Assembly (NCBI GenBank): GCA_002269645.1
Contig: NIVC01002771.1
Coordinates: 1 to 64,000, forward strand
Source of the DNA: Macrostomum lignano
Lineage: Eukaryota
Length of the DNA stretch: 64,000 bases
Direction of reading: 5' to 3'
Part shown: positions 612 to 63,758 of the stretch, piece by piece
Position numbering within the stretch: the first letter of the stretch is position 1
Layout: the number at the start of each line of letters is the position of its first letter
Program-made: the position numbers and the translations under genes
The notes under the pieces: generated by a model
Databases searched by the model: none
The model's input: the letters and a program-made list of their open reading frames with translations, nothing else
Told to the model about the DNA's origin: nothing

Positions 612-985
<374 letters not shown>

Positions 986-2179
986 GTCAGTTTCTGACTG
1001 TCAATTCACCGTTCATCTCGTCAGTTATATTGCACAGCATGCGTCTGCATTGCGCAGAAGCCGGTCAGCTTTTGTACTTTCTTAATTTTAAATCGGCATC
1101 AAAAGCCACTTGATTTTCTACCATGAAAGTGGTGCAATCCACTTTTCATTTTTTTCTGGAGAGAAAGCGGAAATATTACCCGAAAGAAGCAGCGGAAAGG
1201 AAAAATCCTTATTCAATTTCCAGAATCGTAAAAAGCAATTAATCGTCAAGAAGGAATGTCCACGAAGATAAGCTGCGGAAATGCTTGATTGAACTGAATT
1301 GAATTCAATAAGTAAGTAAAGCTTGTGCTGTGCTGTGCTTAAAAACAAGCTTTGCCAATCATTGCGTTGAACAAGGGCTTAGATTTAGATAGTTACTGAT
1401 TCAGATTGAAGTTAAGAATGTGAATCCGCTATTTTATTAAACATCGAAAAAAATCTGCTTTCTTGGTGCTATTGAAATGATTAACTAGTCTACAGAGTTT
1501 AATGGATTTGTAGTAGAGAGCACTCATTTGTATAAAATGCATAGATTTCCTGCTATTGAGAAACCATGCTTTAAAAATGGCTCTGCATGGCGGCTGTCAT
1601 ACGAAGTTTACGATACTTGTACACAGATAAGTTAAAAGAGAAAAAGTCATTGGAGAATTGTCCTCAATAGAGCCTACCTTCGTCCAAATATTCGGTTCAC
1701 GCCGACCTCGTGACTCTGTGTTGATGCCAATCGCTGAGCCAGCAGGCGGATTAGCTACTTGGTAGTGAGTTCTCATGGACCAATATTGGCATTTATTGGT
1801 GCGTCAGTTTGTTAATCTGCGTCAGTCTATTAATTTAAATACTGATTCGAGTCGAACTCAATCTGACTTTTTTAGGACTATAGCCATTTTCCATCTTTCT
1901 CATAAATTAAACCTTCCCTACTTGCCTTGTATGAGCGAATTCTATGGCAAAAAATGACTTGTCAATAATGATATATACCATGGTATTTCAAGCTCGACTA
2001 TGGCAAACGTGACTTCAATTTTGGCAAACGCATGAACCATCTGGTAATATGTCTGCGGCCAACTCCGGTACATTCTAACAATTCAATGACTCTATCTCAC
2101 AATAAAACATCAGAATGGCGATTTTCAAGGCATCATTTCCGTTCTCCGGGATTTTATTCGGGTAAAATTCAGTGCAGTA

Positions 2180-3892: not shown

Positions 3893-4070
3893 GTTTTCGA
3901 CTTCGGCATCCTGATTCCCCCCGTTCTATTTATTCTATTGGCTGTTGAATGCCATAGACAGCAGTGCCCCATTTCATGAAGAACTGCGTGGGGAAGGGAA
4001 ACTGCTGTCTATGGCATTCAACAGCTTTTAGAATGGAACGGGGGGCATCAGGATGCTAAAAGTCGAAAAC
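3893..4070. mobile_element. Palindromic MITE/foldback element
   Basis: Arms of about 70 bp: GTTTTCGACT (3893) pairs with AGTCGAAAAC (4070), and a perfect 25-bp inner stem (3941-3965 with 4001-4025) encloses a 35-nt loop. Confidence 0.75.
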
Positions 4071-4305: not shown

Positions 4306-4656
4306 CTAGCTGGCTTCTTCAACGCTGGCAACCGTTCTCTGCTTTCCTTGTTGCGCCTGGCGCCGTTTGAAGACAAAGTAGAGCGCCAGGATGAGCGCAA
4401 CGGACAGCAGGAGCAGAATGAGGCCAGAAAGCACGAGCCGATCGGGCAACTGCATCGAGGCCATGTTATTCTTGGAGGGCATGTAGCATGTCTCGGTGCA
4501 GATGTCGCCACAGAACGGTTCCAGACAGACGCACTCGTACTTGCTTGGACCGTCGCGAGCCCGGATTACTCGACAGAATCCTCCCTCCTGGCATGGAAAG
4601 TCGAACCGACCCTCGATGTGGATCGCCATCTCCTCGGCTGTGCAGTTCTCTGTCAT
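4306..4656 (-). CDS. Single-EGF-domain transmembrane protein (EGF-ligand-like), 116 aa, no signal peptide
   Basis: Six EGF cysteines (C5, C22, C28, C42, C44, C53; CQEGGFC, CVC, GDIC), a hydrophobic segment LVLSGLILLLLSVALILALYFVF and a KRR stop-transfer. AAATTCAG acceptor 3 nt before the ATG. Paralog at 13202-13657. Confidence 0.85.
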   Translation of the reverse strand: MTENCTAEEMAIHIEGRFDFPCQEGGFCRVIRARDGPSKYECVCLEPFCGDICTETCYMPSKNNMASMQLPDRLVLSGLILLLLSVALILALYFVFKRRQAQQGKQRTVASVEEAS

Positions 4657-5103
4657 GTTCTGAATTTATGTAGGGAAAGTGTGTTTTCGAAAGTGTTAGC
4701 AGGGATATTACTGAGCCTTGCAGAAATGAGAGCGCTAGTAAATTCAAGACTAATGAGTGGAAAAATTTCCCAATAAAGAATAGGTCCTCTGCTTGAAGCA
4801 GAACTACTCACCATTGAGTCTCGCTAAAGGACCTTGAAAGATAAAGCTTTAAATTGAACAAGTCCGCTTTGGCACCTGCTTTTAGGTTTGGCAGCTGTCT
4901 AAATAGCTAAGTCAGTACATGGTTCTATGCTTTTACCTCGAGCTTTTGTACCCAAGATTTACGGGGGTTGAAGACACCGCCGCAGCCACCTCAAGTCCGA
5001 GTGTTGCATGACGCGTTTGTTTATTTCTAAAACTGTTCGCCATGCAGTTGCTGCGCTGCTGCAGCTGGCACAGAAGTCTGCCGTGGCTTGGGGGTCACCG
5101 GAA

Positions 5104-5376
5104 CTATACCCCTAGATATTGTATGCTTTTACTCTTAAATTTGAGGCGTGCCGCTAAACTGCTGTCTATAGATAGGCATCGAAATGTGCAGTTTGAAACT
5201 TCATTCGAATCGTTGCCATTTTTGTCTGACAAATTTGGCTTACACTGTATAGCAGATATGACTTCTGCTAGAGTCCACCCCTTTCGTCTGCCGTGCCGCG
5301 CATACAGATGAAAAGCAACCAGATTCCTTATTTGTCTTTTTTGCACAGATCGCCATTTAGCTCGTAAAGCAAACAC
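5104..5376 (-). mobile_element. Possible degraded non-LTR reverse transcriptase fragment
   Basis: FHLYARH resembles a decayed YADD motif and KSIQYLGV resembles the KYLGV motif; the spacing is shorter than canonical. Confidence 0.3.
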
Positions 5377-8300
5377 CAGTTAGGCAGCTAGGAAGGATGG
5401 GGTCAAGGATTGCTTTGTATGAGTAGCAAGAGGACGCTGTACTCTTATATCAAGGACCACTAGCAGTCTACAGGAGGCTACACCCAAAAAAGGTGTAATT
5501 GTTTCAAGACCAATTTCATTGAAAAAATACACTGCGGAGCTGATAGGAAAAATCATTTTTCATCCCTCAGTCAATTTTATCTGGGGCAGTGAAGATTACC
5601 AATCTTTTAAATTAGCATGCATAGGATGTTACTCTGTTATAATTTATATAGTTGTTTAGTGAAAGTTTAATTTTCATATTGTTTTCTTTTTTGATTCATG
5701 AGCTAAAAGTTGTAAATACTCATAAGTGGAATTGAACTTATGCTGAACTTTGTTTTGTTCCTTTTTGATTCAAGTATATTCGTAATAAAAATGCTGAATG
5801 CAGGTACTCTTAAGCCATCATTGATTTTGTGATGAAAAAATGTTTTTTTCCTATCAGCTCCGCGGTGTATTTTTTCTAGGAAATCGGCCTCCAAAAATAT
5901 TCACGATCTTTGTGTGTTGCTATTTACTACTAGTGGTCCTTGTCTTAGATTTAGAGAAGTTTTGATAACAGGCTTTTTTCGAAAAATGCATGTAAATGCG
6001 AAAACGCAATTTCCTTCCGGATCCAATAATATTAGCTCGTAGTTCAAGCTCAGCTTTACAATTTGAGACAGTGCAGTAGGGAACCTTTTGATTAAACCTT
6101 ATTTGATTATTTCTTTACATTGATATTACTGTCTCGTAGTTTACGTGTGCAATGGAATTTTAGGGTCTACCTACAAAGTTAAACCAGCTGAACGTTTGCC
6201 AAGCGACATTGGTCAGCCAGACGTTTCCCAACTGATGTTTAACAGCTTCAAAATTCACAAGAAAATTAACAAGCTGTAAACCATATTTGTAGTAGTTATT
6301 TCTGATGAATGAACACCCGATAGACATGCACTTAAATTCTGGAAAACATCGTCTTCAAAGGGCGGGCAGGTTTTCGTTGCTATCACGAAATATGATGAAA
6401 ATGCCATCAGTACACACAAGAAAGCTTCGAGAAAAGTTGCATATGCCAAAGCACATGATACTAGCTAGACACACTTTGACATATCGCACCATATGTTTAC
6501 TCGTTTAGCAGACGTTTTTATTGTCTCAACTGACTCATCAAACTTCAATGCAAGAAAATCTGCCCGTAAAGTTGCGTTTTTGCTTGGCCAAGTTTGCATT
6601 ATCGTAAAACTGCGCTCTTGCACAATAGGAAACAAAACTGCTTGTACATTTACAACTAGTATCTTGGGATTTAGTGCATGCTCCCCTCTCCTCCATGTGT
6701 ACTGTTTTGGGCAAATTGCTTGTAATTACTGTAGGTTCTCGTCGGAACCTTTAGATGGTCGGTCGCGTTATCCTCTCAAAGTTGTATCGCCGGCACGGGC
6801 TATGATGCTGCTGATAAGAAGTATTGGCAGATGCTACTGGCGATGACGGGCGCTTGAGCCGCTGCATATTTGTTTCGAAATGCGGTACATTCGCGTTTCT
6901 CATTTCTTGATTTCACATTCAATGTTTACCATCAAACTTTACAATCCTCCAACTTCGTGCCCGGCGCCGATCCAGTCACAAAGGCTGCTTGAGCACGCAA
7001 TGGCATAGGCGTTGTAATTTTTTGGCTTTGTATTTTTTGGCACACTCCACATGCACTCGCACAAGTGCGTACAAGCAGGCTCTGCAACGAAAATAGTAAG
7101 CCCTGGCATAAGCGCACATGCGCAAAAGCATAAGCGCACATTTACGAGTAATATAATTAATGATATGCTCAAATTTTCCTTTCTCACTTTTTAAGCAATA
7201 GAATTTCTAAAAGACAGGTAGATTGTATAGTATGCAACTGAGTTGAATAATGGCCAAAACTCGAGTGCGCGTAGCGCACGAGTGTCTATGGCCATTATTC
7301 AACGAAGTTGCATACTATACAAGTGCATTGTATTTATACTTTCACTCAGCGCCCAGTCATTATTCCACACTTTTGTCGCTGTCATTATTCCACACTTTTT
7401 ATCATGCTTCAATTGGCTGTTTTAAGAGTTGTTTTACCCATAGACGACTGAGTTGTGTGGCTTAGTTTGACCATAGACAACACTGTGATGAGTGCTGATT
7501 TTGCTTGCGTCTTGCAAGAAATCAGGAAAGCGAGTAGTGGGAGAAAAAGCTTTTTGTCTTGTCAAACAACTATGGCTATAGTGCATCTCGTCAAACAGCC
7601 GCGCTTATTAATTGAAAAAAATCTTCCTGTCGACGACTGAACGAACCGTGCGGCGCTACCTAGGAAGAAAACGCGACCATGCAGTCTTCAACGCCTCGAC
7701 GGCTATAAACGATGCCTGAAAGCGGCCAATCGATTCAGTCGAGCAGCCGACAGTCCCAAAGAATCCCAGCTTGGATACTGCGGTACCAAAGAAGCTCATC
7801 AGACGAAGCTCATCAGTCGCATGCCAACTTAACCAAGACATGCATCTTTCAAATGGTAAGTTCGGCAACTATACTTGAGCACCAGTATTTCTCTTTCATA
7901 GAAAACATTCAACATAGACCAACTCCTTTTGCAGTGCCAAATCATCAGGCTAAAGTGTCGAGCATCTTTGGAAACTGCGGCTTTGAGAACTGTGCATGTT
8001 TCACTTTGGGTGACAAATTGATTTTTACATTGTCAAATTGCGACTACAAACTGATAAACTGCACTAGCTGTGACATTTATTATTAACTCTTTTCGTGTAG
8101 CTGGTACTTTAGTTTTAATGATTTTTCCTTTTTGTTCATTTACTTATTGTTGTTCTGTATTTATTAACAAAAATACTGAGCGATGGATTTTTTCAATCCA
8201 AATGTCTATGGTACACATCAAAACTGTGGAATAATGGCCAAAATATTTTTTCATTGCGTCTGGGTAAAAGTATAATTGCAATGTAAAATTTTGGGTTGAG

Positions 8301-8771
8301 AAAGCACCCCCTGAGAATTTTAGTCAGATCCCGATTGAAACTAATAAGAAACATCGTTTTTTCTGCCCATCAAAATCTAATTGAATTTACTTGTAAAATA
8401 TATAGTGGCTGGAAGTCAAAGTCAAAACACTAACTCTCCGTATTCTAGAAGGCAACCTCTCAACAGGAAGGTGTTCACAGAAGAACAGTAGAAAGACCAT
8501 TGGTGTATTTCAAATACACACATTTTTCCTTTGTCTGGATCTCCAAGAATATTCAACCAATTACCATAAAAATCCAGAACAGGGGCTAAAATTTTCCGCT
8601 TTTTTCGATGAAGCAACTTCGAGAATCAGGAAAAAATGGCATCATCGAGACATTCAACGATTCTCCTCGGGGTGTCTGGTGGCAAATTAAAACCCAACAA
8701 CATTGGCAAAATTTTTCTGCTCACAAAATCTCATCATGAAACCACGTCGGCTCAGCAAACTATGCATATCA

Positions 8772-9178
8772 GTCGTAGAGGCCTTTGTTCTCAGCATCCT
8801 AGGCACCAGGGTCCCCTTCATCACCGTCTGGAGCATCGGCGGCGACCTTCGGGACCTTCAACAAAAGCACCCGATTGGCATCTCAGAGACGGCCGCTGCG
8901 TTCCCAAAACTGAAATGGAATAATCCTCTTCTGCATACAACATTCAGTCAGTAGACATAATCGGTGAATGAAATGGACGATGGCGACCCTCTAGGCTGAC
9001 CTGTAGACATATAGGCGCCCTTCGGGACCTTCAACAGAGTGCCACGTGGCCCTGTCGAGCTTGCACCCCCACAATGCGGGTGCTTTTGTTGAAGGTCCCG
9101 AAGGTCGCCGCCGATGCTCCAGACGGTGATGAAGGGGACCCTGGTGCCTAGGATGCTGAGAACAAAGGCCTCTACGAC
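8772..9178. repeat. Perfect 102-bp inverted repeat (8772-8873 / 9077-9178) inside longer diverged inverted homology (about 8480-9480)
   Basis: Base-by-base reverse-complement identity over 102 bp; patchy homology continues about 290 bp outward on both sides. Confidence 0.92.
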
Positions 9179-12100
9179 AGATGGACCCAGATTATTGAGC
9201 CAATATGGATTCACCATGAAGGTTTATACAGTGTAGTGCTGGTTGTCCTTGCCACCAGTGTCTTCGACAAGAATCGTTGAATATCTCGACGATGCTGACG
9301 TCGGATGACTTTGAAAGTTGGTTCGTCGGAAAGGGCGGAAAAATTTGACCTACATGGTGGACTTTTACGAAGATCGGTAATTCTGTTTGCAAGCTATCGT
9401 GAAATGGGTCGTGTGTATTTGTAATACACCCCCGTGGTCTTTCCCCATGGGGAAAAATAGCGTGGTCTTTCTACTGTTGAAGAGCATTGTAGCGTTAAAC
9501 CTCGTGAAGCACGAACACTGCACGCGAAACGGGGAAGTACATGTAGATTAATAAAGCCACATGCAGCCATATGTACATGAAGCAAAGCTAAGAGGTAAAC
9601 GCCGCTTTTTGCGTCCCGATCTGAAGGTCGTTACGCAACGTGTCTAAGTTGCAATATTGTCTTTATATTCTTACAGACAGCAGAGAATCGCAGCCAACCT
9701 CTCCGGTTCTATTACTAATACACATCATAGGTAGCCGACGTGTTCTCAAATTGCCAGTTCAAAAGCTAGATGTACAGTTGCTAATTGCGGTAATGTATGC
9801 TTTTCTTTTTAATTCAACGCTATGAGCTAATTAAGAATCCACTAATGTTGCCGATCGGGACATTTATTTCCACTTCAAGTAGATTTACAAGTATAGTTGG
9901 AACTTAGAAAAATTAAAAAGTAACTGCGTCGGAAATGGTAACTCTCCATTTAAAATATCAAATGAGCAAGAAATCTTTTCAGCCCCGGATCAAGTACATG
10001 CATCGAATATTTCGCGCAGTCACCCTGCACTAGTTGCTATGAACAAGTTGTTATGAAAAACAAACCAACACAGCTAACTACGAGTACCATCAGCTATATA
10101 TATCCAATCCGATTCTACTTACATGTACGAGTACGAGCGTTTTAGCATTCGCAATTAAGCTTAATGAATGAATGTACGCGCACAAAAAAGCATACCACAC
10201 ACCCTTGCCATCTATAAATGACAGGATGTTAAATACATCTTGATGCATGTGACTTGGACTGTTGTCCGACAATCGCGCTCGTGTATTTGAAAGTGAACTT
10301 ACTACTCTTAATAGTTTGCCGGCTATTAACGGTTGTTGCTTTTGGCTTTAAGCAAATAGAATTGCCCTGATAAGATTGTCATCGAAGGCGTACTCGGCCC
10401 GGAGGGCTGTGGTGCGGCTTGGGGCTTCTGGCCAACGATCTTGTACCGCTGGTCAGCTGCCCGAATTTCAGGAAGAGTACCGCGCTCAGCTGTGCTGCTT
10501 TGAGCTGCCATTGCGCTTGGTGAACCTAACTGTACAGGGAGCTGGTACATGTAAATGGACCGCCTGGTCAGGTCTCGGCCTCAGAAGCATGGTTCCACCA
10601 AGGCGCCACCTTGAAAGCATGAGCCCCAGAAGTTGATAGGTACCCTGCCAGTGTGACCCACCGGGAATTCGGGGATCCTAGGCTTTGGAGATGTGTTCGG
10701 CGCCAGAGTGACAGGCTCTCACCTGTTTGCGGCACAGCCCGGTTGATCTCCCAGCTGCCCACGGCGACCCTGCCTGAGAGGTAGTTTCAGCTGGAGGATG
10801 ATAGTCTCTAAGGAGGCCGGACCTGGGTCCACTAATGCGGGTTGGTGGGGCCAGACTGTGCAAAAAATAAAGAGCTTACCAGTTAGGACCACCCGAAATC
10901 TGTCGCCTCTGCTGGCGCCCAATCTTTGCACTTACGGATATAAGGCTCACCCCCGGCTCATCTCCAAAATTCTGCGAATCTTAGTGACGCAGCCCGAAAT
11001 TGCTTTGGGCTACGAAAAGGGGATTCCAAACTCCAGGTGGCCCGAGTCTTTTAGACTGCTGGTGGACCCACCCCACCCACCGTGATCCGCGCTTAGCCCA
11101 GCCAGGCAACCCGGTTTAACAACAATATTTTTTGTTAAAATCCTCCTTAAATTTTGCAACAAACGTATATTGAGTTGTCCTTGATACTGCATCAGCTGAC
11201 TCTCATAGGCAGTATGTTTGTTTAGGCAGTGTACTTAGCTATCTGTTATAATTCTGTTATTTGTATGTTAAATCAACGTAGATAGAAGATGAACGCAGAT
11301 AGAAGATTGTAAAAAAATTTTAAGTATAGTTTGACTTTGATTTATAATATGTTATAATCACCAAAACGGTATTGTAACTAAATTGAAATACATTTTTACT
11401 TTAAATTTACGTATACACGCAGCGAATGGTATGGATTATTTGATATTAAGGCAGCAAGTGGGTCTGAAGCATATTTCAGTAAGAAGTCAGTTTTCATTAG
11501 AAAAATTGACATACCAGCAAACTTCAACATTCGAGCGGGGGAGAAAGTCTTGGAGTTGGCAAATAGTGTAGAGTTAATAGGTGTATCATGCAATTTAAAT
11601 GCAAATGGGGCTTTAGCAGATCATAGAGGGACAGTAAAGTGTGGAATATGATAGGATGGGATATGATAAAATAGCAGAAATTGCATAGATCAGGCAGGGT
11701 TACAGCTAATGCCCTCCAAGCTAAACAGATCTGAGCTGACAAGGCAGTCTTTATGTACGAGTCGTATGTATAAATAGATTGACTGTGATTTGGATTTAAC
11801 ATGCAAGCAAGGAATATCAGATAGCTAGTAGTAGTATATAAGAGAAAATTCTGTTCCAGCAGTAATTTTAGTCTGTTTTTGGGTAATTCTTCGGGACATT
11901 TTTGAAGCGTTGCCTGCTTTCTGCAGCAGCTGCGGCGGAATGACGAAGCATTTAGAAGCAGTCGCTGCTGCTACAAGTTTTTTTAGATATGGACGTCATT
12001 CTTCTCTGCCTCATAGCAACCACTGAGATTATCTTGGATACGGGCTTCTCTTTCAGCTGACACTGCTCACCTACTGGCTGGCACAGCACTACAGATTCCA

Positions 12101-12664
12101 CATCCAAAAGTAAGCAAGCACCATCCCAGTTGCCATGAGGCTGAGAAACCGAATTTCAGTGATAAATGTGAGACAGTTCATTAGGAGTGTATAAAAAAGT
12201 TAAAACAACAGAATGTAACTAACTTCACAGTAGCTATACTTGACAGAAAGAATAGAAAAAATGTAATGGAAAATGATTTTCTAAAATATAGTTCGCTTTT
12301 GCTAACATGCTGCTCATTAACTCAGTTTTGAGTCATATTTATAAAACAAATTTTATCAAAATGCTTACACGAACGTCTTTAGATTACAAAAGTGTCTTTA
12401 ACTTCTAATTGTGGTGACAAGTGGCTAGTTACGGTCACGGACTCACGGCACAGAATTGCGGACTCGAAATCGATAAATATTCGAAGTCACATCACAGACG
12501 TAGATCTACATGTTAAAATTGTAAGATAAAATTAAATTTCTAGCGATTTAAACGCTTTTACAGACATTTTTTAATCTTGAAAGGTCTTGCTCAGTTGCAG
12601 AAAAGGTCGCTAATTACACAAGGCTCGAAAAATAGGGTGGGAATTTGTCTTGCAAAAATACAGC

Positions 12665-12677
12665 GTTGCTAGGCAAC
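12665..12677. promoter_or_regulatory. RFX X-box-like palindrome GTTGCTAGGCAAC
   Basis: Matches the RFX consensus GTTGC-N-GGCAAC; CCAAT (about 12705) and ETS-like CCGGAAG (about 12806) motifs lie nearby. Confidence 0.4.
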
Positions 12678-13201
12678 ATGGAGTAATTTTGGTCTTTGTG
12701 ATCCAATCAGCTTTTCGACAATTGGTTTAAGTGAAATTTGTTAATGATTAGAGCCGAGGGTTCTATATAACCCTTGACTTAGCTACATGGATGTTGAGAG
12801 TAAACCCGGAAGCGACTATTTCAAAGCATAATAACAAAGTCATGTAATCTTTTTAAATAAGTAGCCATTTTTGTTTGTTGATTTAAAAAAATATATTAAT
12901 TGCTTTGTTTTAGGCTGCAGTTTTTACCGCAATACCCCGTTGGATCTAGCTAATTGACAGCTATTAAACACTGTACTGACAAAAGTCTGCCACAAAAAGT
13001 CACTAGATAATAAATAATAGCTCGTACTTATTTTTCTATAGAACTCACTAATGCAAATTATGCAGGAAATCATCCATACCCAATCAAAGCTGAAGATTCC
13101 ACATCGTGCCTTGCTTATGCGATCCTAATATTAAATATTTTTTGTTTTCACCAGACTGAAGACAAACTACGAGCAATGCGAATAATAAAATAATTCTGTT
13201 A

Positions 13202-13657
13202 TCAAGCCAAGTATTCTTTGCGCTGCGAACCCGTTTCAACGTTCCACACTGGCGGCTGCGACTGCAGTGCGGGTGCAGTCGTACCGCTCACCGGCCTGTA
13301 GATCGGCTGGTTACCCCGACGGTTAATCAGCGGATTGCCGCTCTGCTCGCGTCGCTGGCGCTCCTCCTTGGCCCTGTGCTGGCGGTGCCGCCGGACCAGA
13401 AAGAAAATCACTACGCACAGTATAATAATAGCGATGACAACCACCAGTGGTATGACAACAACCATCTTGAGGTCAGCTGCGCCTAGAAAGTCCGGCGTAT
13501 CGCAGATGTCATTCTTCCAGCCCTCCAAGCACTGGCAGTAGAGCTTACCTGGCGGTATCTTTCTGCAATAGCCGCCTTCCAGGCAGTAGCTGTGCAGCTG
13601 GATGCGTAGCCTCTCACGCTCTTCCGCCGTGCAGTTGGTAACGCCATAGTCTGACAT
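13202..13657 (-). CDS. Single-EGF-domain transmembrane protein (EGF-ligand-like), 151 aa, no signal peptide
   Basis: C9-x15-C25-x5-C31-x9-C41-x-C43-x8-C52, TM segment MVVVIPLVVVIAIIILCVVIFFLV followed by RRHR. GCC-ATG start context; an in-frame TGA lies between the upstream TTCTAG acceptor and the ATG. Confidence 0.88.
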   Translation of the reverse strand: MSDYGVTNCTAEERERLRIQLHSYCLEGGYCRKIPPGKLYCQCLEGWKNDICDTPDFLGAADLKMVVVIPLVVVIAIIILCVVIFFLVRRHRQHRAKEERQRREQSGNPLINRRGNQPIYRPVSGTTAPALQSQPPVWNVETGSQRKEYLA

Positions 13658-14768
13658 GGCCAGTCTTCAGCGCTAGAAGATCACTAATCTGGTTTTAGAG
13701 GCCTGCTTACAGACTGCGGCGGTTTTTACGCGCTTTTTTTCTGAGTAAGCTCTGTCCCTTATACTTAATTGAGTATAAGAAGCAGATTGTTGCCAGACTG
13801 CTGTGCTATTAGTGTTGAGAACACCAAATGAGGAGAGGGCTTCGCCGATAAAGGCCTCGCTTTGTGCGCAGTCGTTTGGAATGCCCGCTCTGTATGTACA
13901 TTTGCTAACAATGTTCACTTCTCTCCCTCCTCTCCCCCACTCCTGCCCAGCCGGACTGGACATAGCCCTCTCTAGTGGGGTGGGTTGGAGCAGGAATGTG
14001 AAACACTTCTTGCGGGAATGGAGAGGGAAAGGAACGGAAAGCCGCGCCCACCACCCCAGATTCCTCCTCCTTCTAATGCTTGTGGCGAGACCAAACAAGA
14101 GTGGGTGGGTGGGGTGCATTCCGCATTGTGTGGGCTGTTTTGAGCTTGTATGGACCTATTTGGCAATTTTTATTTAATTTATTAGCAAGAAAAATGCTCA
14201 TTATACTTATAGATTACAGTAATCCTACAGCAATCACAGCATAAATGACCGTTTTACTTTTGTAAATGCATGCGACACAATGTATTGTGTCGACGGCGAG
14301 CTTGAAATCTGTTGTGTGTGTCCATAATCGGCACAAGTCCAAGATCTTACACACATGAAACAATTTACAGGTATTGCATAGATTTTATAAAAGAGTGCTT
14401 GACTCTTCAATTATAAGCGTTAGGATTTTGCAGTGGTACGAGCGATAGATTTCAAAATTTTCTGCAAAAAATGTTTTTCGCCTACTGTTAATAGTATCGC
14501 TTAAGTTACAGATAAAGTCACTCAGACAGCACTCAGAAAAATCAAATCAAATCAGACCTAAAAAAAGGTAAGATCATTATTAATTAGTCTAATAATATCC
14601 AAACACAGAGAATTACTTTATAAACCAGTTCATACACCATTAACGCATTAAAAACGTTTATTTAAAGAGATTATTTAGAAATTTCACGATTTTACGAAAA
14701 CAAGGTTTTCATTCAGAAAGGTAACGGTAGTTCTTTATTTGGAGCTGAAAGAATAACCTTAGTATTCC

Positions 14769-14982
14769 AAGATCATACTTTTAGGGATCATTTCTACAGT
14801 ATGTATCGCCAGGACGTCAACCAAAATTGACCCTGGACCCAAACCCGCGAGGACGAGTTCTAGCCTGCCTTTCTGAGCGCGAAGCGGGTTGCAGCTGGCA
14901 GCGAAGTCTGCCTCGGCTGCGACTATTGATGACCGCTTTTCACCCTCTCGGGTGGAAAGGGAAGGCAGGCAAGCTGAGCGGT
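14769..14982 (+). ncRNA. U3: U3 snoRNA
   Basis: 5' AAGATCATACTTTTAGGGATCATTTCTACAG (boxes A'/A), box C' (GAGGACGA), box B (CTGAGCGCGAAGC), box C (TTGATGA), a CTTTTCACCC/GGGTGGAAAG hairpin, a GCCTGCCTT/AAGGCAGGC stem and terminal box D CTGAGCGGT. The length of 214 nt matches metazoan U3. Confidence 0.95.
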
Positions 14983-16472
14983 TTTTCAGAAACGAAAGAT
15001 ATATAGTTATACCTAATCAATAGTTTCCGCAAATAAGTTGTTGCAGTTAAGCAAGAGCGGGTAAAAATGAAAAGTAGATATTTTTATTATTAAGTAGATA
15101 AATTTAGATATTTCCTCTCATCCATAGATCAGCTAAGTGCAACGAAAAGGTTCACATTACCACACGTCAAAGATTAATGCTAGACCAAAGTTGGTTCAGA
15201 ACCATTTTAAAATTTAAGCAAGACGAGTTCGTATACAAAAACAAATAGGCAATAAACAATATAACGCGATAACTTCATCTCGATTTTGCTCCCACAAGGT
15301 TATTTAGCTTTTGCTGTTTTTAGCGAGTTTTTGGGTGCCAGTAAAAGCTTCGTTACGACGGAACTCAAGCATAGATTATGAGCAAATATTTCTCTAATCT
15401 TTCTTTGAATACCTGTTCCAGTATCAATTCAAACAGTTCGTTGACTCTGATCAAGTCGCTTAAAATTGCCAGAGAAACGAGGACATGAGGTTGATGGGAA
15501 CATTCGAAAAAGCGAGTTATTTTTGAGCCTACCACTGTATACACGCCTAATGCTTATACAGAGTGCCTCCTTGATACCGAATATGGCTCTATTTGACTCA
15601 ATAAAGTCAAGCCGATGCAGTTTCTGGGAGAAATAAATCGATTCATGTGATTTAAATCTCTTCTTCACACTGCAGAAAAACAAAATTCTATGAATAGTAA
15701 CTTTTAGCAAAGCGAGCAGCCTGTCTTTCACAGATTAATGGAATTGCAAATTGAAGAGTGTATTAAAATTTTAGTGTTGCTTTCAGAGTGGCAGCAGAAA
15801 TTTGGCAATAAACTCCGATGAGTCGAAAATAGAGCTCATAAGCAATGTGAATAGCGCTTTCAATTTTCCCGATGGATTCCATATTTGGCTTCTCATATTC
15901 TCGACGTTGTCCTTGGGAGATTACTCGAACAGCAGTGCAGGTCTGTCTTGCCAAGTGCATGCCAGATAAGGCCTATAATCTGGGCTTTTAACCTTGGCTC
16001 TGCAGTAATATTGGGTTCTATGCTGAGCAAACTGTTCTATACGGAAACTAAGAGAGCGGCGCCTCGTAGTCACGCTTCTGAAAATCCTCTTGGCCGCCGC
16101 TGCGCCTTCCTTATCAAGTTGTCATCCCTGCAACCTGCCTTGGCGAGGGGGGGGGGCTATTTTTGTGCCTTGTTTTATTTAGCTTTGCCTGTTGTACGGC
16201 TGATCTGCTTATACATGTAGTGGAGAAGTGTTGGCTCGGACTCAACTCAGAATCAACGGGATCGAGAGTTACCTCAGTCAAGGTGGAGTAAATTGCATAA
16301 TCTACCCCTAACCCTCTCAAAAGTGGCGACCACAGACGGAATCTTCTGTGATAGCGACTTTTCGATGTTGCTGAGCATAGCTTACATACTCGAAGGCCAT
16401 GCGTTTATGTGATCTGATTGAGTTGACTGTACAGCACTATGCTCTCAAATTCAATGTTTGTTCCTGCAACTC

Positions 16473-17372
16473 GGGGGGGGCATCACAAACCCAAAAACTC
16501 ACAACTCCGAAAAGCGCTTTCCATCATAAACCCCTAAATATCATAAACCCGAAATATCACAAACCCGAAATATCACAAACCCGAAATATCACAAACCCGA
16601 AATATCACAAACCCGAAATATCACAAACCCGAAATATCATAAACCCGAAATATCATAGGTCCGAAAACCAAAATAGCAGCGCCCATCACAAACGGGTTTC
16701 GACGACTTATGATATTTCGGGTTTATGATATTTCGGGTTCGTGATATTTCGGGTTTAAGATGGGCGCTGCTATTTTGGTTTTCGGACTTATGATATTTCG
16801 GGTTTATGATATTTCGGGTTTGTGATTTTTCGGGTTTGTGATATTTCGGGTTTGTGATATTTCGGGTTTGTGATATTTCGGGTTTGTGATATTTCGGGTT
16901 CGTGATATTTCGGGTTTGTGATGGACGCTGCTATTTTGGTTTTCGGACTTATGATATTTCGGGTTTATGATATTTCGGGTTTATGATATTTCGGGTTTGT
17001 GATTTTTCGGGTTTGTGATATTTCGGGTTTGTGATATTTCGGGTTTATGATTTTTCGGGTTTGTGATATTTCGGGTTTGTGATATTTCGGGTTCGTGATA
17101 TTTCGGGTTTGGGATGGACGCTGCTATTTTGGTTTTCGGACTTATGATATTTCGGGTTTATGATATTTCGGGTTTGTGATATTTCGGGTTTGTGAAATTT
17201 CGGGTTTGTGATGGGCGCTGCTATTTTGGTTTTCGGACTTATGATATTTCGGGTTTATGATATTTCGGGTTTGTGATATTTCGGGTTTTTGATATTTCGG
17301 GTTTGTGATATTTCGGTTTTATGATGGAAAGTGCTTTCGGAGTGTGACTTTTCGGGTTTATGACGGCGACCC
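16473..17372. mobile_element. Non-autonomous Mutator-like/foldback DNA transposon with tandem-repeat TIRs and a 9-bp TSD
   Basis: CTGCAACTC is duplicated at 16464-16472 and 17373-17381. Termini are GGG...CCC. The left arm consists of (TCACAAACCCGAAATA) units and the right arm of their reverse complement, sharing a unique GGAAAG(T/C)GCTTT(T)CGGAG block. Confidence 0.88.
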
Positions 17373-18204
17373 CTGCAACTCTATATTCTAATTGAGCAAT
17401 ATTTTATAGAAGAAATCCTCACATGATAGTTTCGTTTATCAACTTGTCGAATTAAAAAGAGCCATAAATCTTCGTCATTAGTATGATCTGTATGTATTGC
17501 TCACAATGTAAAAAGAAATTTTGGTTACAGAAATCTGTCATGCTGTTTACTGGCCATTGAACTCGTCCGACTCGTCTCGTCCGGTGGGCGAACTTTTTCT
17601 TAGCATCATGCCCATTAAAATGCTCTCTGGCCTCTGTGGAGAGGCAGCCAACAGAGATGGTTAAAGAGATTCTCAGTCTTGCATTCCATTAGGCATCAAT
17701 ATTGCATCAGTCCACATGTATAGAGGCTAAAATGTACAGTTAGAGCAGCTCATCATAGCAGTTCTCTGCTTTGTAGTTCACTCAGACCCACACGTTTGGA
17801 TACATGATGCCTCGATTTCATACTCGAACCAGAAGCTGAATGTCGAGCTAAAAATAAAAGCAGAGTTGGCATTTCTGGTTCTGTCGAACGTCGATCGCAG
17901 TTAAGCCGACTTGCTCGTATAAGGGAATACATTGTATAAGTTACTGTTTCAGGAGGATCTTCATGTGACTTAGCAGGCGAAAATAACTCTTAAGTCTTGG
18001 CCCGACACCAGGAGGGGGACCGCTAGTGACGGACTCTTCCCAGCGTTCTAGCTCAAGGGCGCGGTGAAAACCTACGTGTTAGGCGTTATAGGGTACGAGA
18101 AGGATCTTCAGTTGCCTTCACTAGTAAGCAGCCGTCAACAGATTTCAAGTGTAAATTCAACAATAAACATAAGACAGGAATATTGTGAGAAAGACTCTTC
18201 GCAG

Positions 18205-19090
<886 letters not shown>

Positions 19091-20478
19091 CTCATAATCG
19101 TCAAAGTATGATGAGCCTTGACATCTTCTCAATTATTTTGCCATCGTTACATGTCTTGGCTAAAATACAGAGCTAAAAATATACACGTGAGGAAGTCAAG
19201 AAAATTTTATTTCTAAGATAGCTCGTACTCGTATCTCTTATAATCCTCTACTAGCTATTCAATTGCTGAGTTGAAGCAGTGCACAGTTGCTAAGGATTTT
19301 TCCGGTAAACAGCTCAAATAAATTAAAAACAGTTAAATGTAGAAGCAACCTAAACAAGCTCTTGTAACGACTCTGATTATCAATAAAACAAGCGTTCCCG
19401 AAAATAGCCGGCTTTTCAACAGCAGCTTTTTAATTGCTGCTTTCATAATTGATTGATTAGAGATAAAACCATTTTGAACGATAAAAGCCAACCTAGGAAA
19501 TTTTTTGTTTTAATAGAGTGAAATGAGCAGTTTTCCATTTTTTCAGGGTGAAATCGGCCGAACTGCTGTCCCAATAGTTATCCAACTTCAAAGCTGCTTA
19601 AAGAGAAATTTCCCAGCAAGAGGCAGAGTCGTTCTCTGATAATACCCGAAGGATTATGTCAGTCCAAATCGATAATCGAATTGAATTATTTAAAAATCTT
19701 TTGTTTTGATCAAGCCAGATGTTACGTGGGCGGATCAGCCCACGCAACTGTGCTTGCAGCGTTGCCAATGCACTCTCCGAGAACTGTTCTCACTCTGGCC
19801 TGCAGCAACTGAGTTTCATTTAATGAATTTCATTCATCTGGCCATGAGAGAAGATGGAAACAGAATCTCCATTTAAAGCCAGTCAGTCAGTCAGATGGAC
19901 AATAAAAAGTCGGATCAACGGCGGCAATTTGTATCTGACTGCCGATCTCGGGCGACGGCATTTTGACCATCCCATCCATCTGCGGACGTAGCTATCTGAT
20001 AAAGTGCAACTTCACCCGCAGCTGCAAAGCTTTTTGACAGCTCTTCAATCGTGTGTTACAAGTTCTCACACGCGAATAGGGACAGAACGGTGTTTATAAC
20101 CAAACATGGTAGAGTATAATTCATGCCAGCTCTTATCTTTCAATTTCGTAAAATCTACCCACGTTCCCAACACCACTGAGCGCTCTTCATCCTGTATCCT
20201 CCAACCTCTCCATTTCTATTCTAATAATGAAAGCCCTCCTACGCTGATAGGAGCCCCTAGCAGCCTTTAAAGCAGAAATCAGAGATGCTCCGAGCCAATC
20301 GGAAGCCTCCGGTCTCCATTCTAACCCCTATTTCTCTGCCTTGGCATAGCCTTGATATTTGGCGTCACCAGAGCTGCACCGGGGTTCGCTTGACTTGACG
20401 GCTTCGCGACAAGGCGGAGGAGAAAATCGCACAGACTTCATAAGCTTCGAACCCCATAGCAACTGCAACCGAGCGCCA

Positions 20479-22325
20479 ATGACCTCAAGTGCTCCGGCGA
20501 GTCTGGCAGCCGTAGCCGGTTGCCTGGTGCTGCTCCTGGCGGCAATCGCCTCGGCGGCATCGGCGGAGTCGCCACTGTGGCAGCCAGCGCGATGGGACAA
20601 CTTTCAGTCCATCGACAGTGAACGAGCCGCTGCAGAGCCGGTGGTGGCCGAACTCCGCTCCGGTGAGCTTGCGCCTACCTGTTGACAAAGATTCAGATTA
20701 CTCGTGGGGATGATGATTGTGCAGATTTGTTGAGACTTGAGCGCATCTGTCAATTATAATTTTACGGCGGCAACCGCTATCTAATAAAGGAACTGGTCTC
20801 AAATTCAGACAAAGAGCGGCGCATCTTTGAAAATACCTTATATGGCATGCGCCTTCACTAAAAAGCGCCCCTCCCTCCTTCTCGAGGTTTGAAGTCACAC
20901 ACGCTGCGCAAATGAAAAATCACAATAATTGCTGCAAAGCATACATAATTGCTAATTTTCTTCTCCTATCTGTTGATAGCTCGGCAACTGAGAAAGCTGG
21001 CCATTGATACAGGCTTACACCGGAAATTGGCTCTACTACCTTGCAATTTTGGCCGCTGCAGAGGTTATAAAAAATACGAGTATGATGCACTTAAATGGCC
21101 TAGCACTAACAATACAAGCGTACCTGTGTGACTTAATTATTCATTTCTACGAGCTACGAGCTACGATTTGCATTTTAAGGCAAATAATCAGTAATTGAGT
21201 ACTCGTATCCCACAAATCATTCACGAGTCTGTTGGCAGTCCGTTTGAAAGCATTCTATGTACTACAGTTGAAGGATTATGAGCTCGTAAGCCAATTAGAG
21301 AGATTAAAAATTGAGCTTAAGCGCACCAGCAAAGCATGCCGTATTCATAGCATGCAGAGCACCTTTTATATGCTTGGCATGATGGGCCTTGGTCTCAGCG
21401 CATCTGTACTGAAGCATCAATACTCGACTATTCAACTGCCTCTGCTGCACAGCCTTCAAAAATAGGCATTAATTGGGCTTACAATTGGCAGAGTACGGTG
21501 GCATGGAAATCGCATTCCTTTTATGGTATTCGGCAGGTCTAGTCTGCAATGACGCGTGCTCCGTCATGCTGACGCAGGCGCAGAAATGAAAGCATTTCTT
21601 TAAAAATTCAATTTTAATTTAAGATTAGACGCTAATGTGAATTTCATTCAGGATATCTTAGCGTTTTGTTTGAGACGTTCTTCGCTGAACAGCTACTGAA
21701 TAATTCTACGTATTTTATTGATTGAATGAGACGCGTTCGTCGAATTAAAGCGTGTTTTTCCATTGCTGAGGAGACAAATTTAACATTGTTTCCCTTTCTC
21801 TCGATTGCTAACTCATACAATGGGGCATTTAATAAACTTAATTTGTTTCTCTATTCAGCTTCTTTTTAATTACCAGAGTGGGAATAAAATCGTTGGGCGT
21901 AACAAACCAATGCCGTTAACCAAGTCAACTGATGCTTGAGATAAGTGCTCAATTTTGGAAATCACAGTTTATTTGGTTGGTGGCATAGCTGGTTGAGGTC
22001 ACCTGCTGCTCTCTATTGCCAAAGCCAGTAGCGCTGCTCAAGACTCAATCCCATGCTACCGTGCGAATTCGAACCCGCAGAGCGCCGCTCCGGCCACTGG
22101 CCGTTCCCGATGAGGCTCCGTCGGGTGGCCCAGGCGACCAGGCTGCGCAGACTCGCTGCTGAGCTGCGCGCCGCCATCGACGCCGCCGACACCATTGACG
22201 AAGACGCCGAAGCAGACGTCGAGGAGCCTGCCGCTGGCGGACCGAGGATCGACCAGCCCGGCAGCTACCGCAGGCGGCTCAGCAAGCGCTGCCGGATCGG
22301 CAGGCTGTCCTGCCCCATCGGCTGA
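20479..22325 (+). CDS. Neuropeptide precursor, 142 aa, join(20479..20662,22081..22325), with C-terminal cyclic peptide CRIGRLSCPIG
   Basis: Signal peptide MTSSAPASLAAVAGCLVLLLAAIASAASA. The phase-1 intron GTGAG (20663) to CCCGCAG (22080) restores a continuous frame (429 nt). Multiple RR sites, an acidic spacer and an RRRLSKR site precede a C-x6-C peptide followed by the stop codon. Confidence 0.85.
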
Positions 22326-27643: not shown

Positions 27644-27648
27644 GCAAT

Positions 27649-36215: not shown

Positions 36216-36514
36216 ACCTGTTAGCCAAGCCAACCAGTAGTTTCAGTCTGATGATGATAGCTGATCGGTGTGGACAGTTGTGTGTGTGTGTTAACTATGC
36301 CAAGTTATTCCACACTATTCTCAATACGCGCGGCTGCTTTAAATAAACACGTGTAGTTGTTGATCGGCAATTTCTTGGCATTGTCTTCTGGATTAAATTG
36401 GCTTGGATGGGCCGGTTTTTATGGTGTTCGGTATTTTTGATGCACTACTTTTGCTTACATCTAGTTTAATGGGAGGTCCTGGCACGGGTTTTGCTATCAC
36501 TCCTCGGGTCTTTA

Positions 36515-45905: not shown

Positions 45906-46129
<224 letters not shown>

Positions 46130-55025: not shown

Positions 55026-63758
<8,733 letters not shown>

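What the first reader, a model, noticed from the sequence alone, without database searches (positions are those of the whole stretch)
4306..13657. Tandem pair of leaderless, non-canonical EGF-type membrane ligands
Seen: two intronless paralogs share NCTAEE...C-x-EGG-[FY]-C-R...Y-x-C-x-C-LE...DIC, a TM helix and a basic cytosolic tail. The EGF domain starts within 9 residues of the ATG with no signal peptide, and in the 13657 gene an in-frame TGA between the acceptor AG (13674-13673) and the ATG argues against an upstream coding exon. The C1-C2 loop is long (15-16 aa), and the canonical G-x-R-C before the last cysteine is replaced by GDIC/NDIC. Known: that Arg is important for EGFR binding, and classical ligands either carry a signal peptide or, like some neuregulins, use an internal anchor. 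Inference: these could be reverse-signal-anchor (N-out) ligands, decoy or antagonist ligands, or ligands for divergent flatworm EGFRs.
Basis: partly seen in the sequence, partly recalled or inferred. Interest (0 to 1): 0.7.

Follow-up and report, generated by a model that had tools for sequence, protein, structure and literature searches.

The report
Leaderless flatworm EGF/neuregulin-like membrane ligands
Two neighbouring genes of the flatworm Macrostomum lignano encode small membrane-anchored EGF-type growth-factor precursors without a signal peptide; the same design is already catalogued in planarians (Smed-egf-1 to -5) and known from vertebrate neuregulin-4, so they are new members of a known kind, with one unusual change at a receptor-contact residue.

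Summary
The window is Macrostomum lignano contig NIVC01002771.1. ORFs at 4306-4656(-) (116 aa) and 13202-13657(-) (151 aa) are adjacent paralogs: N-terminal NCTAEE, a six-cysteine EGF domain, one TM helix and a basic tail. No hydrophobic leader exists. In-frame stops lie 9 nt upstream of each ATG.

The design is not new. Planarian Smed-egf-3/-4/-5 begin the same way (MERNCTADE...). They have C1 at residue 5, a 13-residue C1-C2 loop, then TM and tail, and their paper says no signal peptide is predicted. Vertebrate NRG4 has the same layout. A profile of the two ectodomains finds ErbB ligands first among solved structures (heregulin, EGF, NRG1; E 8e-5 to 9e-4; first non-ligand 0.039). The NCT..E motif at C1 also occurs in signal-peptide-bearing spiralian ligands.

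Best reading: N-out (type III) membrane-anchored EGF/NRG-like ligand precursors, probably shed to act on one of the eight M. lignano EGFRs. Arg-to-Ile before C6 is the real peculiarity. The receptor residue that pairs with that Arg (human Asp355) is non-acidic in several flatworm EGFRs, so the loss need not mean a decoy. Binding, topology and expression pattern are untested. Interest is modest.

The parts
13202..13657 (-). Gene B, single-exon CDS, 151 aa (MSDYGVTNCTAEE...), stop included
   Evidence: ORF list. The called gene has exactly this product in GCA_002269645.1. A 99% identical copy is named BOX15_Mlig002914g1 / 'EGF-like domain-containing protein'.
13502..13633 (-). Gene B EGF domain, C1 (res 9) to C6 (res 52), loops 15/5/9/1/8, NDIC before C6
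   Evidence: Cysteine-pattern scan. The A+B ectodomain profile hits heregulin, EGF and NRG1 at E 8e-5 to 9e-4.
13628..13636 (-). Gene B N-C-T sequon (N8-C9-T10), the Cys being EGF C1
   Evidence: Read from the sequence. The same NC[TS] occurs in gene A, Smed-egf-3/-4, P0050 and signal-peptide-bearing spiralian ligands.
13406..13462 (-). Gene B transmembrane helix (res 66-84), followed by RRHRQHRAK
   Evidence: Kyte-Doolittle 19-mer 3.73; K+R is 5 after and 1 before the helix. AlphaFold models helix 60-105 with pLDDT about 90.
13667..13674 (-). Putative (trans-)splice acceptor AG 13674-13673 and in-frame TGA 13669-13667 upstream of the gene B ATG
   Evidence: Sequence read-out. Use of the acceptor is not shown; it only resembles the YTNCAG trans-acceptor motif.
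4306..4659 (-). Gene A main coding exon. The ORF from ATG 4656 is 116 aa; the deposited model starts 3 nt earlier (AAC) after a splice.
4498..4644 (-). Gene A EGF domain, C1 (res 5) to C6 (res 53), loops 16/5/13/1/8, GDIC before C6, plus two extra cysteines (C49, C57)
   Evidence: Pfam EGF scores 20.6 bits, just under the 21.5 cut-off.
4639..4647 (-). Gene A N-C-T sequon (N4-C5-T6)
   Evidence: Read from the sequence.
4381..4437 (-). Gene A transmembrane helix (res 74-92), followed by KRRQAQQGKQR
   Evidence: Kyte-Doolittle 19-mer 3.00; K+R is 5 after and 2 before the helix.
4660..4811 (-). Annotated 152-nt intron (or outron) of gene A: GTGAGT donor at 4811-4806, TTCAG acceptor ending at 4660, in-frame TAA at 4668-4666
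   Evidence: The reconstructed splice reproduces the deposited 118-aa product exactly.
4812..4833 (-). End of annotated exon 1 of gene A: spliced-leader-like GGTCCTTTAGCGAGACTCAATG ending in the initiator ATG
   Evidence: Local alignment to the 35-nt M. lignano SL scores 20, the 99.9th percentile of window segments, with about 7 loci as good in the window. SL sequence from PMC8629364.

Best explanation
The two genes are Macrostomum members of a flatworm group of small, leaderless, membrane-anchored EGF/neuregulin-like ligand precursors, the group that holds planarian Smed-egf-1 to -5. Proposed mechanism follows. The mRNA has no upstream coding exon. For gene A, translation starts either at the annotated exon-1 ATG or at a spliced-leader AUG (both give the same product), or at the ORF's own ATG two codons downstream. 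The single TM helix acts as a reverse signal-anchor (type III, N-out/C-in), so the roughly 60-70-residue N-terminal EGF domain is moved into the ER lumen. There its three disulfides form and the conserved N-C-T sequon can be glycosylated. At the cell surface the protein signals to neighbouring cells, or is shed by a juxtamembrane or intramembrane protease, and acts on one or more of the eight M. lignano EGFRs. Shown here: sequence architecture, closed upstream frames, charge asymmetry, family relations and ErbB-ligand-like EGF sequence. Inferred: topology, glycosylation, shedding and receptor binding. The Arg-to-Ile change before C6 is read as lineage-specific rewiring of one receptor contact, not as loss of function.
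For: Family evidence: Smed-egf-3/-4/-5 begin M-x-x-[ND]-C, with C1 at residue 5, a 13-residue C1-C2 loop, a TM and a short basic tail. hhalign of the Macrostomum profile against the Smed profile gives 81% probability, E 1.2e-5, with the alignment starting at TNCTAEE/RNCTADE. The planarian paper notes that no signal peptide is predicted for egf-1 to -5. A marine metatranscriptome ORF, P0050 (MTHYINCTDSEMERAKC...), has the same layout.

Evidence that the EGF domain is ErbB-ligand-like: a profile of the A+B ectodomains against PDB lists eight ErbB ligands first (E 8e-5 to 9e-4), with Notch1 at 0.039. The six-sequence flatworm profile hits heregulin/NRG1 at 9e-10 to 2e-8. Of ten top hits in the 1.84-billion-protein search whose source names were looked up, the named single-EGF+TM ones are 'probetacellulin' or 'pro-neuregulin-4-like' (three clusters). 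By sequence, other hits in that search are vertebrate NRG4 proteins.

The NCT..E motif at C1 also occurs in signal-peptide-bearing spiralian ligands of Terebratalia, Novocrania, Lepidodermella (NCT..E) and Membranipora (NCT only); those of Patella and Biomphalaria keep CT..E at C1 without the Asn. In those proteins the domain is certainly extracellular.

NRG4 is leaderless yet functional. The annotation is transcript-based, so both genes have RNA support. The receptor partner of the missing Arg varies in flatworm EGFRs.
Against: No direct evidence exists for topology, secretion, shedding or receptor binding. The Arg before C6, conserved in the classical vertebrate, fly and nematode ligands read here, is Ile in both proteins. 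Gene A also lacks the Leu-containing tail after C6 and carries two extra cysteines. Pfam EGF is below its gathering score for both proteins. Direct sequence similarity to the planarian proteins is weak (BLASTP E about 1e-3), and EGF domains carry little phylogenetic signal. RNAi of Smed-egf-1 to -5 gave no phenotype, so even the planarian relatives are only putative ligands. The AlphaFold models are of low confidence (pLDDT 50-59).
Confidence: 0.55

Rival explanations
1. Decoy, antagonist or cis-inhibitory ligands. The proteins reach the surface as in the main explanation, but without the Arg they bind EGFRs unproductively or not at all. They might instead sequester receptors or true ligands.
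For: Arg is replaced by Ile in both paralogs. Gene A has two extra cysteines and no Leu-bearing tail after C6. M. lignano has eight EGFRs but only two previously counted ligands, so regulatory diversity is possible.
Against: The Asp that pairs with the Arg is itself absent from several flatworm EGFRs. Other catalogued or candidate ligands also lack the Arg: P0050 has GTHC, P0042 GVHC, Membranipora GPQC, and the OCR text of the M. lignano NRG reads GTLC. No known EGFR antagonist has this architecture (my own knowledge: Drosophila Argos is secreted and binds the ligand, not the receptor).
Confidence: 0.15
2. Small EGF-domain membrane proteins unrelated to EGFR signalling, for example adhesion or other receptor systems. 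The resemblance to ligands would then reflect only the generic EGF fold plus a TM helix.
For: EGF domains occur in many unrelated proteins. The strongest hits in the large search after self and paralog are multi-EGF mollusc proteins (P0005, P0006, P0007). Pfam EGF is sub-threshold, and a key receptor-contact residue is missing.
Against: On the ectodomain alone, ErbB ligands outrank Notch and coagulation-factor EGF modules by about 40- to 500-fold in E-value. A single EGF domain directly before a TM helix with a short basic tail is the ligand architecture used as the criterion by Barberan et al.. The NCT..E motif is shared with spiralian Spitz-like ligands.
Confidence: 0.15
3. Mis-annotated 5' ends: a distant upstream exon supplies a classical signal peptide.
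For: The canonical spiralian relatives have a signal peptide plus a Cys-Ser/Gly-Arg...Pro-rich N-terminal region. Alternative AG dinucleotides exist just inside or before the ORF of gene B.
Against: In-frame stops lie 9 nt upstream of both ATGs. The transcript-based annotation gives no such exon. A scan of the minus strand found no Spitz-like motif upstream of either gene (4657-23000). The only leader-like ORF upstream of gene B (searched to 23000) is a 23-aa ORF at 15278; the only one upstream of gene A, at 12843, lies just downstream of gene B's stop. Six independent sequences from three sources all start 4-8 residues before C1.
Confidence: 0.07
4. Decaying or functionless duplicates, for example retrocopies of a trans-spliced mRNA, that are transcribed but make no working protein.
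For: Both have a single coding exon, whereas all planarian ligands have introns. A spliced-leader-like sequence lies upstream of gene A. The key Arg is lost in both.
Against: Both ORFs are intact, with all six cysteines, the TM and the charge asymmetry preserved after a divergence deep enough to erase DNA-level similarity. The gene A protein is identical on two contigs. The two gene B copies differ by 3 synonymous changes and only 2 replacements, both in the tail.
Confidence: 0.06

Closest known systems
Schmidtea mediterranea Smed-egf-3, -4, -5 (the egf-1 to -5 group of Barberan et al. 2016, Sci Rep 6:28071)
   Same: They start at M-x-x-[ND]-C with C1 at residue 5, and egf-3/-4 carry the N-C-[TS] sequon. 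The C1-C2 loop is long (13 residues against 15-16 here). A single EGF domain is followed by a TM helix and a short basic tail, and total length is 111-124 aa. No signal peptide is predicted.
   Different: The planarian proteins keep H-G-K-R-C before C6 and have a 4-residue C2-C3 loop and introns. The Macrostomum proteins have G/N-D-I-C, a 5-residue E-G-G loop and one coding exon. Pairwise similarity is weak (BLASTP about 1e-3; hhalign E 1.2e-5).
Vertebrate neuregulin-4 (NRG4)
   Same: About 115 aa, no signal peptide, EGF domain starting within 9 residues of the Met, TM helix and short tail. It is a working ErbB4 ligand released by shedding. NRG4 sequences appear among the profile hits.
   Different: NRG4 has the canonical 7-residue C1-C2 loop and G-A/S-R-C. 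It is a vertebrate paralog, so the likeness in layout is probably convergent or reflects retention of a neuregulin-type trait.
Spiralian Spitz/Keren-type EGF ligands (for example Patella KAK6170970, Biomphalaria 'probetacellulin' / 'pro-neuregulin-4-like')
   Same: They share the C-T-x-x-E motif at C1, preceded by Asn only in the brachiopod, gastrotrich and bryozoan ligands, the C-L-x-G-G-x-C loop and a TM with a basic tail. They are the best pairwise matches of gene B (BLASTP 3.6e-12 to Patella with composition correction off).
   Different: They carry a signal peptide, a Cys-Gly/Ser-Arg N-terminal motif, a Thr/Pro-rich linker, a 9-residue C1-C2 loop and G-x-R-C. The flatworm proteins look like N-terminally truncated versions.
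Heregulin/NRG1 EGF domain (PDB 1HAE, 1HRE, 3U7U)
   Same: It is the closest solved structure by sequence profile. Many NRG1 isoforms also lack a signal peptide (my own knowledge).
   Different: NRG1 has Ig or other N-terminal domains, a long cytoplasmic tail and the canonical Arg.

Membership tests
EGF-like domain (Pfam PF00008) | Six cysteines with the spacing C-x-C-x(4-5)-C-x(8-14)-C-x-C-x(8)-C | tested here: met
   A has loops 16/5/13/1/8 and B 15/5/9/1/8. Only the first loop is longer than usual.
EGF-like domain (Pfam PF00008) | Score at or above Pfam's gathering cut-off (21.5 bits) | tested here: not met
   A scores 20.6 bits and B 13.7 bits. A family profile nevertheless hits solved EGF domains at E 8e-5.
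EGFR/ErbB ligands, EGF-type (criteria of Barberan et al. 2016) | Full-length protein with exactly one EGF motif and an architecture like known ligands (EGF directly before 0-2 TM segments) | tested here: met
   One EGF motif per ORF, one TM and a basic tail; criteria.
EGFR/ErbB ligands | Conserved G-x-R-C, the Arg that pairs with receptor Asp355 in human EGFR | tested here: not met
   GDIC in A and NDIC in B. The alignment to heregulin places Ile opposite Arg.
EGFR/ErbB ligands | Hydrophobic Leu a few residues after C6 (EGF Leu47, TGF-alpha Leu48) | tested here: inconclusive
   In B, C-DTPDFL aligns with C-EHADLL of the EGF/TGF-alpha chimera. A has C-TETCYMPS with no equivalent.
EGFR/ErbB ligands | Binds and activates an EGFR | not testable with these tools
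   Needs a binding or phosphorylation assay. Only the variability of the receptor contact site could be checked.
Flatworm leaderless EGF group (Smed-egf-1 to -5) | Met 4-8 residues before C1, no hydrophobic leader, extended C1-C2 loop, then TM and short tail | tested here: met
Flatworm leaderless EGF group (Smed-egf-1 to -5) | Significant sequence relatedness beyond the generic EGF pattern | tested here: inconclusive
   hhalign gives 81% probability and E 1.2e-5. BLASTP gives only about 1e-3, and mollusc ligands score better. No phylogeny was attempted because the signal is weak.
Neuregulin-4 | Vertebrate NRG4 orthology: 7-residue C1-C2 loop, G-x-R-C, ErbB4 ligand | tested here: not met
   Loop length and the Arg differ. 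Only the architecture is shared.
Type III (N-out, reverse signal-anchor) membrane proteins | No cleavable leader, a single TM and more positive charge on the C-terminal flank | tested here: met
   The actual orientation was not tested.
SL trans-spliced genes of M. lignano | SL-containing reads ending at a YTNCAG acceptor | not testable with these tools
   Only acceptor-like sequences are seen: AATTCAG at 4666-4660 and TTCTAG at 13678-13673. No reads were available.

The most novel reading that the evidence does not exclude
Flatworms may have turned the ancestral signal-peptide-bearing Spitz-type ligand into a truncated type III protein whose Met sits a few residues before EGF C1. For gene A that Met may even be supplied by the spliced leader's own AUG or by an SL-like cis exon. 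In Macrostomum the ligand-receptor interface may have been rewired as a whole. An aliphatic residue replaces the canonical Arg in both of these ligands and apparently also in the M. lignano NRG (OCR reading GTLC). Some of the eight EGFR paralogs carry Ile or Lys where human EGFR has Asp355.
Probability: 0.2. Interest if true: 0.55.

Novelty: new member of a known kind. Interest (0 to 1): 0.3.

Why it matters
M. lignano is a transgenesis-capable regeneration model. It has eight EGFRs, but only two ligands were counted in the 2016 survey. These two loci, each present twice in the assembly, add candidate ligands. They show that the leaderless design seen in planarians also exists in an early-branching flatworm, so it is old within the phylum. 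They also offer a natural test of whether the 'essential' ligand Arg / receptor Asp contact can be replaced. None of this overturns current views of EGFR signalling.

Tried and rejected
1. Word-index homology searches with each protein found only the near-identical second genomic copy. Distant relatives needed the full HMMER scan and the literature.

2. The second locus, NIVC01001952.1, is about 99.5% identical including non-coding DNA, so it cannot reveal conserved upstream exons.

3. AlphaFold2 on the full-length protein and on the ectodomain gave mean pLDDT of 59 and 50. I therefore ran no structure search, since matches to such models would be meaningless. The models only suggest a helix in the long C1-C2 loop and the main EGF hairpin.

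4. I looked for expression data by gene ID (Mlig002914) in the paper library and in the supplements of the genome paper, and found nothing.

5. The survey's own M. lignano EGF-type ligand could not be read because that part of the supplement is illegible in the held text. I cannot say whether it is one of these two genes.

6. I tested Arg/Asp co-variation between ligands and receptors. The receptor site is variable, but the pattern is not clean, because planarian receptors also lack the Asp while their ligands keep the Arg. I rejected it as proof and kept it as context.

7. I considered a retrocopy origin from an SL-bearing mRNA. The SL-like match upstream of gene A is suggestive, at roughly 1% by position, but it is separated from the ORF by 152 nt. 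Upstream of gene B only a 7-mer matches. This is not established.

Full report
**Source and observation.** An exact look-up of the 151-aa product places the window on Macrostomum lignano assembly Mlig_3_7 (GCA_002269645.1), contig NIVC01002771.1, with window and contig coordinates coinciding. The two ORFs exist as described: 4306-4656(-), 116 aa, and 13202-13657(-), 151 aa. They align at 44% identity over the EGF region, E 2e-8. A six-frame scan for an EGF cysteine pattern finds only these two sites in 64 kb, apart from microsatellite artefacts. C1 is residue 5 in A and residue 9 in B. The loops are 16/5/13/1/8 and 15/5/9/1/8, and the residues before C6 are GDIC and NDIC.

**Topology signals.** Each protein has one strong hydrophobic segment (A 74-92, B 66-84). 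There are five Lys/Arg in the 15 residues after it and one or two before it. Nothing at the N-terminus resembles a signal-peptide core: the best 8-mer hydropathy is 0.6-0.7, against 3.0 for the TGF-alpha control.

**Upstream frames.** Upstream of gene B the sequence reads TTCTAG|CGC TGA AGA CTG GCC ATG. Gene A has an in-frame TAA at 4668-4666. No other gene is called between the two, and no DNA-level repeat links them. They are an old tandem pair.

**Gene structure.** The deposited annotation is transcript-based: StringTie/TACO, then boundaries set from spliced-leader and poly(A) reads, then TransDecoder. Both genes therefore have RNA support, although I could not see the reads. Gene B is annotated as the plain ORF.

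Gene A is annotated as 118 aa, MNMTEN.... I reproduced this product exactly by joining ATG 4814-4812, which is followed by GTGAGT, to AAC ATG ACA at 4659 across a 152-nt intron ending in TTCAG. So 'intronless' is not strictly true for gene A, but the extra exon adds only Met-Asn and no leader.

The M. lignano spliced leader is CGGTCTCTTACTGCGAAGACTCAATTTATTGCATG, and its preferred acceptor is YTNCAG. Trans-splicing at the same acceptor would yield the same MNMTEN product from the leader's own AUG. The end of annotated exon 1 (GGTCCTTTAGCGAGACTCAATG|GTGAGT, 4833-4812) resembles the leader. Its local alignment score is 20, the 99.9th percentile, with about seven loci as good in the window. I cannot tell whether this is a real cis exon, a leader-derived relic or a mapping artefact.

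A scan of the minus strand found no Spitz-like Cys-Ser-Arg...Pro-Lys-Pro motif upstream of either gene (4657-23000). The only leader-like ORF upstream of gene B (searched to 23000) is a 23-aa ORF at 15278. The only one upstream of gene A, at 12843, lies just downstream of gene B's stop.

**Relatives.** Word-based searches found only a second, 99% identical genomic copy, named BOX15_Mlig002914g1 / 'EGF-like domain-containing protein'. It lies on NIVC01001952.1. That locus is about 99.5% identical in non-coding DNA too and is therefore uninformative.

A full HMMER scan of 1.84 billion representatives with a profile of A and B gave 125 hits at E <= 1e-3. After multi-EGF mollusc proteins, these include:
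- elephant-shark probetacellulin (E 5.8e-8);
- mollusc proteins named 'probetacellulin' or 'pro-neuregulin-4-like' (Biomphalaria) and an unnamed EGF-like protein of Patella;
- several vertebrate NRG4 proteins;
- P0050, a 121-aa ORF from a Tara Oceans metatranscriptome that starts MTHYINCTDSEMERAKC and has the same leaderless EGF-TM-basic layout.

**The planarian family.** The decisive comparison came from the literature. The supplement of Barberan et al. 2016 (PMC4914847) lists Smed-egf-3 (MERNCTADELLYEKDKTFC...), -4 (MYKNCSITESLDEFGEKLC...) and -5 (MEVDCNPQESLYIDGGKYC...). I then retrieved the deposited sequences. They have C1 at residue 5, a 13-residue C1-C2 loop, one TM, a short basic tail and 111-124 aa in all. 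[quoted passage not shown] Profile-profile comparison of the Macrostomum and Smed sets gives 81% probability, E 1.2e-5, with the alignment starting at TNCTAEE/RNCTADE.

**Link to canonical spiralian ligands.** Pairwise, the Macrostomum proteins are closer to signal-peptide-bearing mollusc ligands than to the fast-evolving planarian ones. Related motifs at C1 occur in the catalogued ligands:
- Terebratalia, Novocrania and Lepidodermella have NCT..E, and Membranipora NCT without the Glu;
- Patella and Biomphalaria have C-T-x-E-E.

These ligands carry a signal peptide. Those of Terebratalia, Patella and Biomphalaria also show a Spitz-like Cys-Ser/Gly-Arg N-terminal region. My inference is that the flatworm proteins are N-terminally truncated descendants of the ordinary spiralian Spitz-type ligand. 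The sequon that is certainly lumenal in the ancestor has been kept.

**Is the EGF domain ligand-like?** Pfam EGF is just below threshold for A (20.6 against 21.5 bits) and weak for B. A profile of the two Macrostomum ectodomains searched against all PDB sequences lists eight ErbB ligands first: heregulin-alpha, EGF, an EGF/TGF-alpha chimera and NRG1, at E 8e-5 to 9e-4. The first non-ligand, Notch1, is at 0.039, and coagulation factors are at 0.05 or worse. The six-sequence flatworm profile hits heregulin/NRG1 at 9e-10 to 2e-8. Neuregulins are the classical leaderless ErbB ligands. NRG4 in particular lacks a signal peptide and has the shortest ectodomain of the family.

**The missing Arg.** In every alignment Ile stands where the ligands have Arg. 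From my own knowledge of the human EGF-EGFR and TGF-alpha-EGFR complexes, this Arg pairs with Asp355 in the A-F-R-G-D-S-F stretch of receptor domain III. Using the M. lignano and planarian EGFR sequences printed in the same supplement, I aligned this stretch. HMMER alignments to human EGFR and a MAFFT alignment place these residues at the Asp355 position:
- M. lignano: Ile (EGFR-4), Lys (EGFR-7), Glu (EGFR-8), Asp (EGFR-1);
- S. mediterranea: Lys, Asn and His (EGFR-2, -3, -4), Asp (EGFR-5, -6).

The region is poorly conserved and the sequences are OCR text, so this is only indicative. It shows that the contact is not fixed in flatworms. It is not a clean co-variation, because the planarian ligands read here (egf-3/-4/-5) keep Arg. 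Other candidate ligands also lack Arg: GTHC in P0050, GVHC in P0042 and GPQC in Membranipora. The OCR text of the M. lignano NRG reads G-T-L-C. Gene B keeps a D-F-L tail that aligns with the D-L-L of the EGF/TGF-alpha chimera. Gene A does not, and it has two extra cysteines (C49, C57).

**Mechanism.** The best-supported reading is a type III, N-out/C-in, membrane-anchored ligand precursor. Shown here are the absence of a leader, the closed upstream frames, a single TM, the positive-inside asymmetry, a cysteine-rich N-terminal domain that needs an oxidising compartment, a conserved sequon, and working precedents with the same layout. Inferred are the actual orientation, glycosylation, release by a sheddase or rhomboid, and receptor binding. 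The TM of B contains a Pro and that of A a Ser-Gly near its outer end, as in many rhomboid substrates; this point is my own knowledge and was not tested.

RNAi of the planarian relatives egf-1 to -5 gave no visible phenotype, so the whole group remains 'putative' as ligands. The AlphaFold models were too uncertain to help (pLDDT 59 and 50). They only suggest a helix in the long C1-C2 loop (residues 11-21) and the main beta-hairpin.

**Verdict.** N-out anchoring is the likely topology, and binding to divergent EGFRs is plausible. The design, however, is not non-canonical. It is already catalogued in planarians and matches NRG4. The survey counted only two ligands (one EGF-type, one NRG-type) for M. 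lignano against eight receptors, so at least one of these loci adds to the list. I could not read which sequence the survey used. The Arg-to-Ile change is the one feature worth an experiment. I rate this a new member of a known kind, of modest interest.

Noticed in passing
window 4812-4833 (-): GGTCCTTTAGCGAGACTCAATG, followed by a GTGAGT donor, resembles the 35-nt M. lignano spliced leader and ends, like the leader, in ATG|GT. It is the annotated first coding 'exon' (ATG only) of gene A. It could be a real cis exon, a leader-derived relic or a read-mapping artefact.
   Followed up: partly
L002 (NIVC01001952.1:56595-77050), whole locus: A second copy of the whole two-gene locus is about 99.5% identical, including non-coding DNA. 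The gene B copies differ by 3 synonymous and 2 replacement changes (V123M, S133P, both in the tail). The gene A protein is identical. This fits the recent genome duplication or retained haplotypes of M. lignano.
   Followed up: partly
flatworm EGFR sequences in the supplement of PMC4914847 (not in the window): By alignment, the residue matching human EGFR Asp355, the partner of the ligand Arg, is Ile, Lys, Glu and Asp in M. lignano EGFR-4/-7/-8/-1. It is Lys, Asn, His, Asp and Asp in Schmidtea EGFR-2 to -6. The OCR text of the M. lignano NRG reads G-T-L-C before C6.
   Followed up: partly
P0050 (MERC, ERR1711988_1096384): A Tara Oceans metatranscriptome ORF of 121 aa (MTHYINCTDSEMERAKC...GTHC...TM...RLRKNR) has the same leaderless layout and also lacks the Arg. 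Its source organism is unknown.
   Followed up: no
window 23345-24295 (+): A 316-aa ORF has an N-terminal hydrophobic leader, a C-type lectin domain (Pfam 24.5 bits, above the cut-off) and a hydrophobic C-terminus. It is called as a gene in the annotation.
   Followed up: partly
window 28151-28660 (+): A 169-aa ORF has CCHC zinc-knuckle motifs (Pfam zf-CCHC, sub-threshold). It is probably the gag remnant of a retroelement.
   Followed up: no
window 60369-61040 (+): An exon encodes part of a nuclear-hormone-receptor ligand-binding domain (Pfam Hormone_recep 21.7 bits, just under the cut-off). As an open frame it runs straight into a long tetranucleotide microsatellite.
   Followed up: no
window 669-1085, 18086-19132, 25952-27729, 36491-37066, 37902-38447, 43993-44690, 45831-46268, 47365-48342, 53155-54474, 56115-56735, 61034-61996: There is a very high density of micro- and minisatellites. 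Tetranucleotide arrays read SIYL... or CLSV... when translated, and longer units lie at 26-27.7 kb, 44 kb, 47.4-48.3 kb and 53-54.5 kb. They produce long spurious ORFs in several frames.
   Followed up: no
window 8639-9295, 5477-5920, 7223-7322, 3932-4034: Inverted-repeat pairs (for example 143-nt arms, 90% complementary, 203 nt apart) lie mostly in the intergenic DNA between the two genes; the pair at 3932-4034 lies just beyond gene A's 3' end. They look like MITE-type or foldback elements.
   Followed up: no
P0002 (MetaClust, 117 aa): A database entry for gene A's protein starts MMTEN... instead of MNMTEN... or MTEN.... Neither the genomic sequence nor the annotated splice explains this start.
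   Followed up: no
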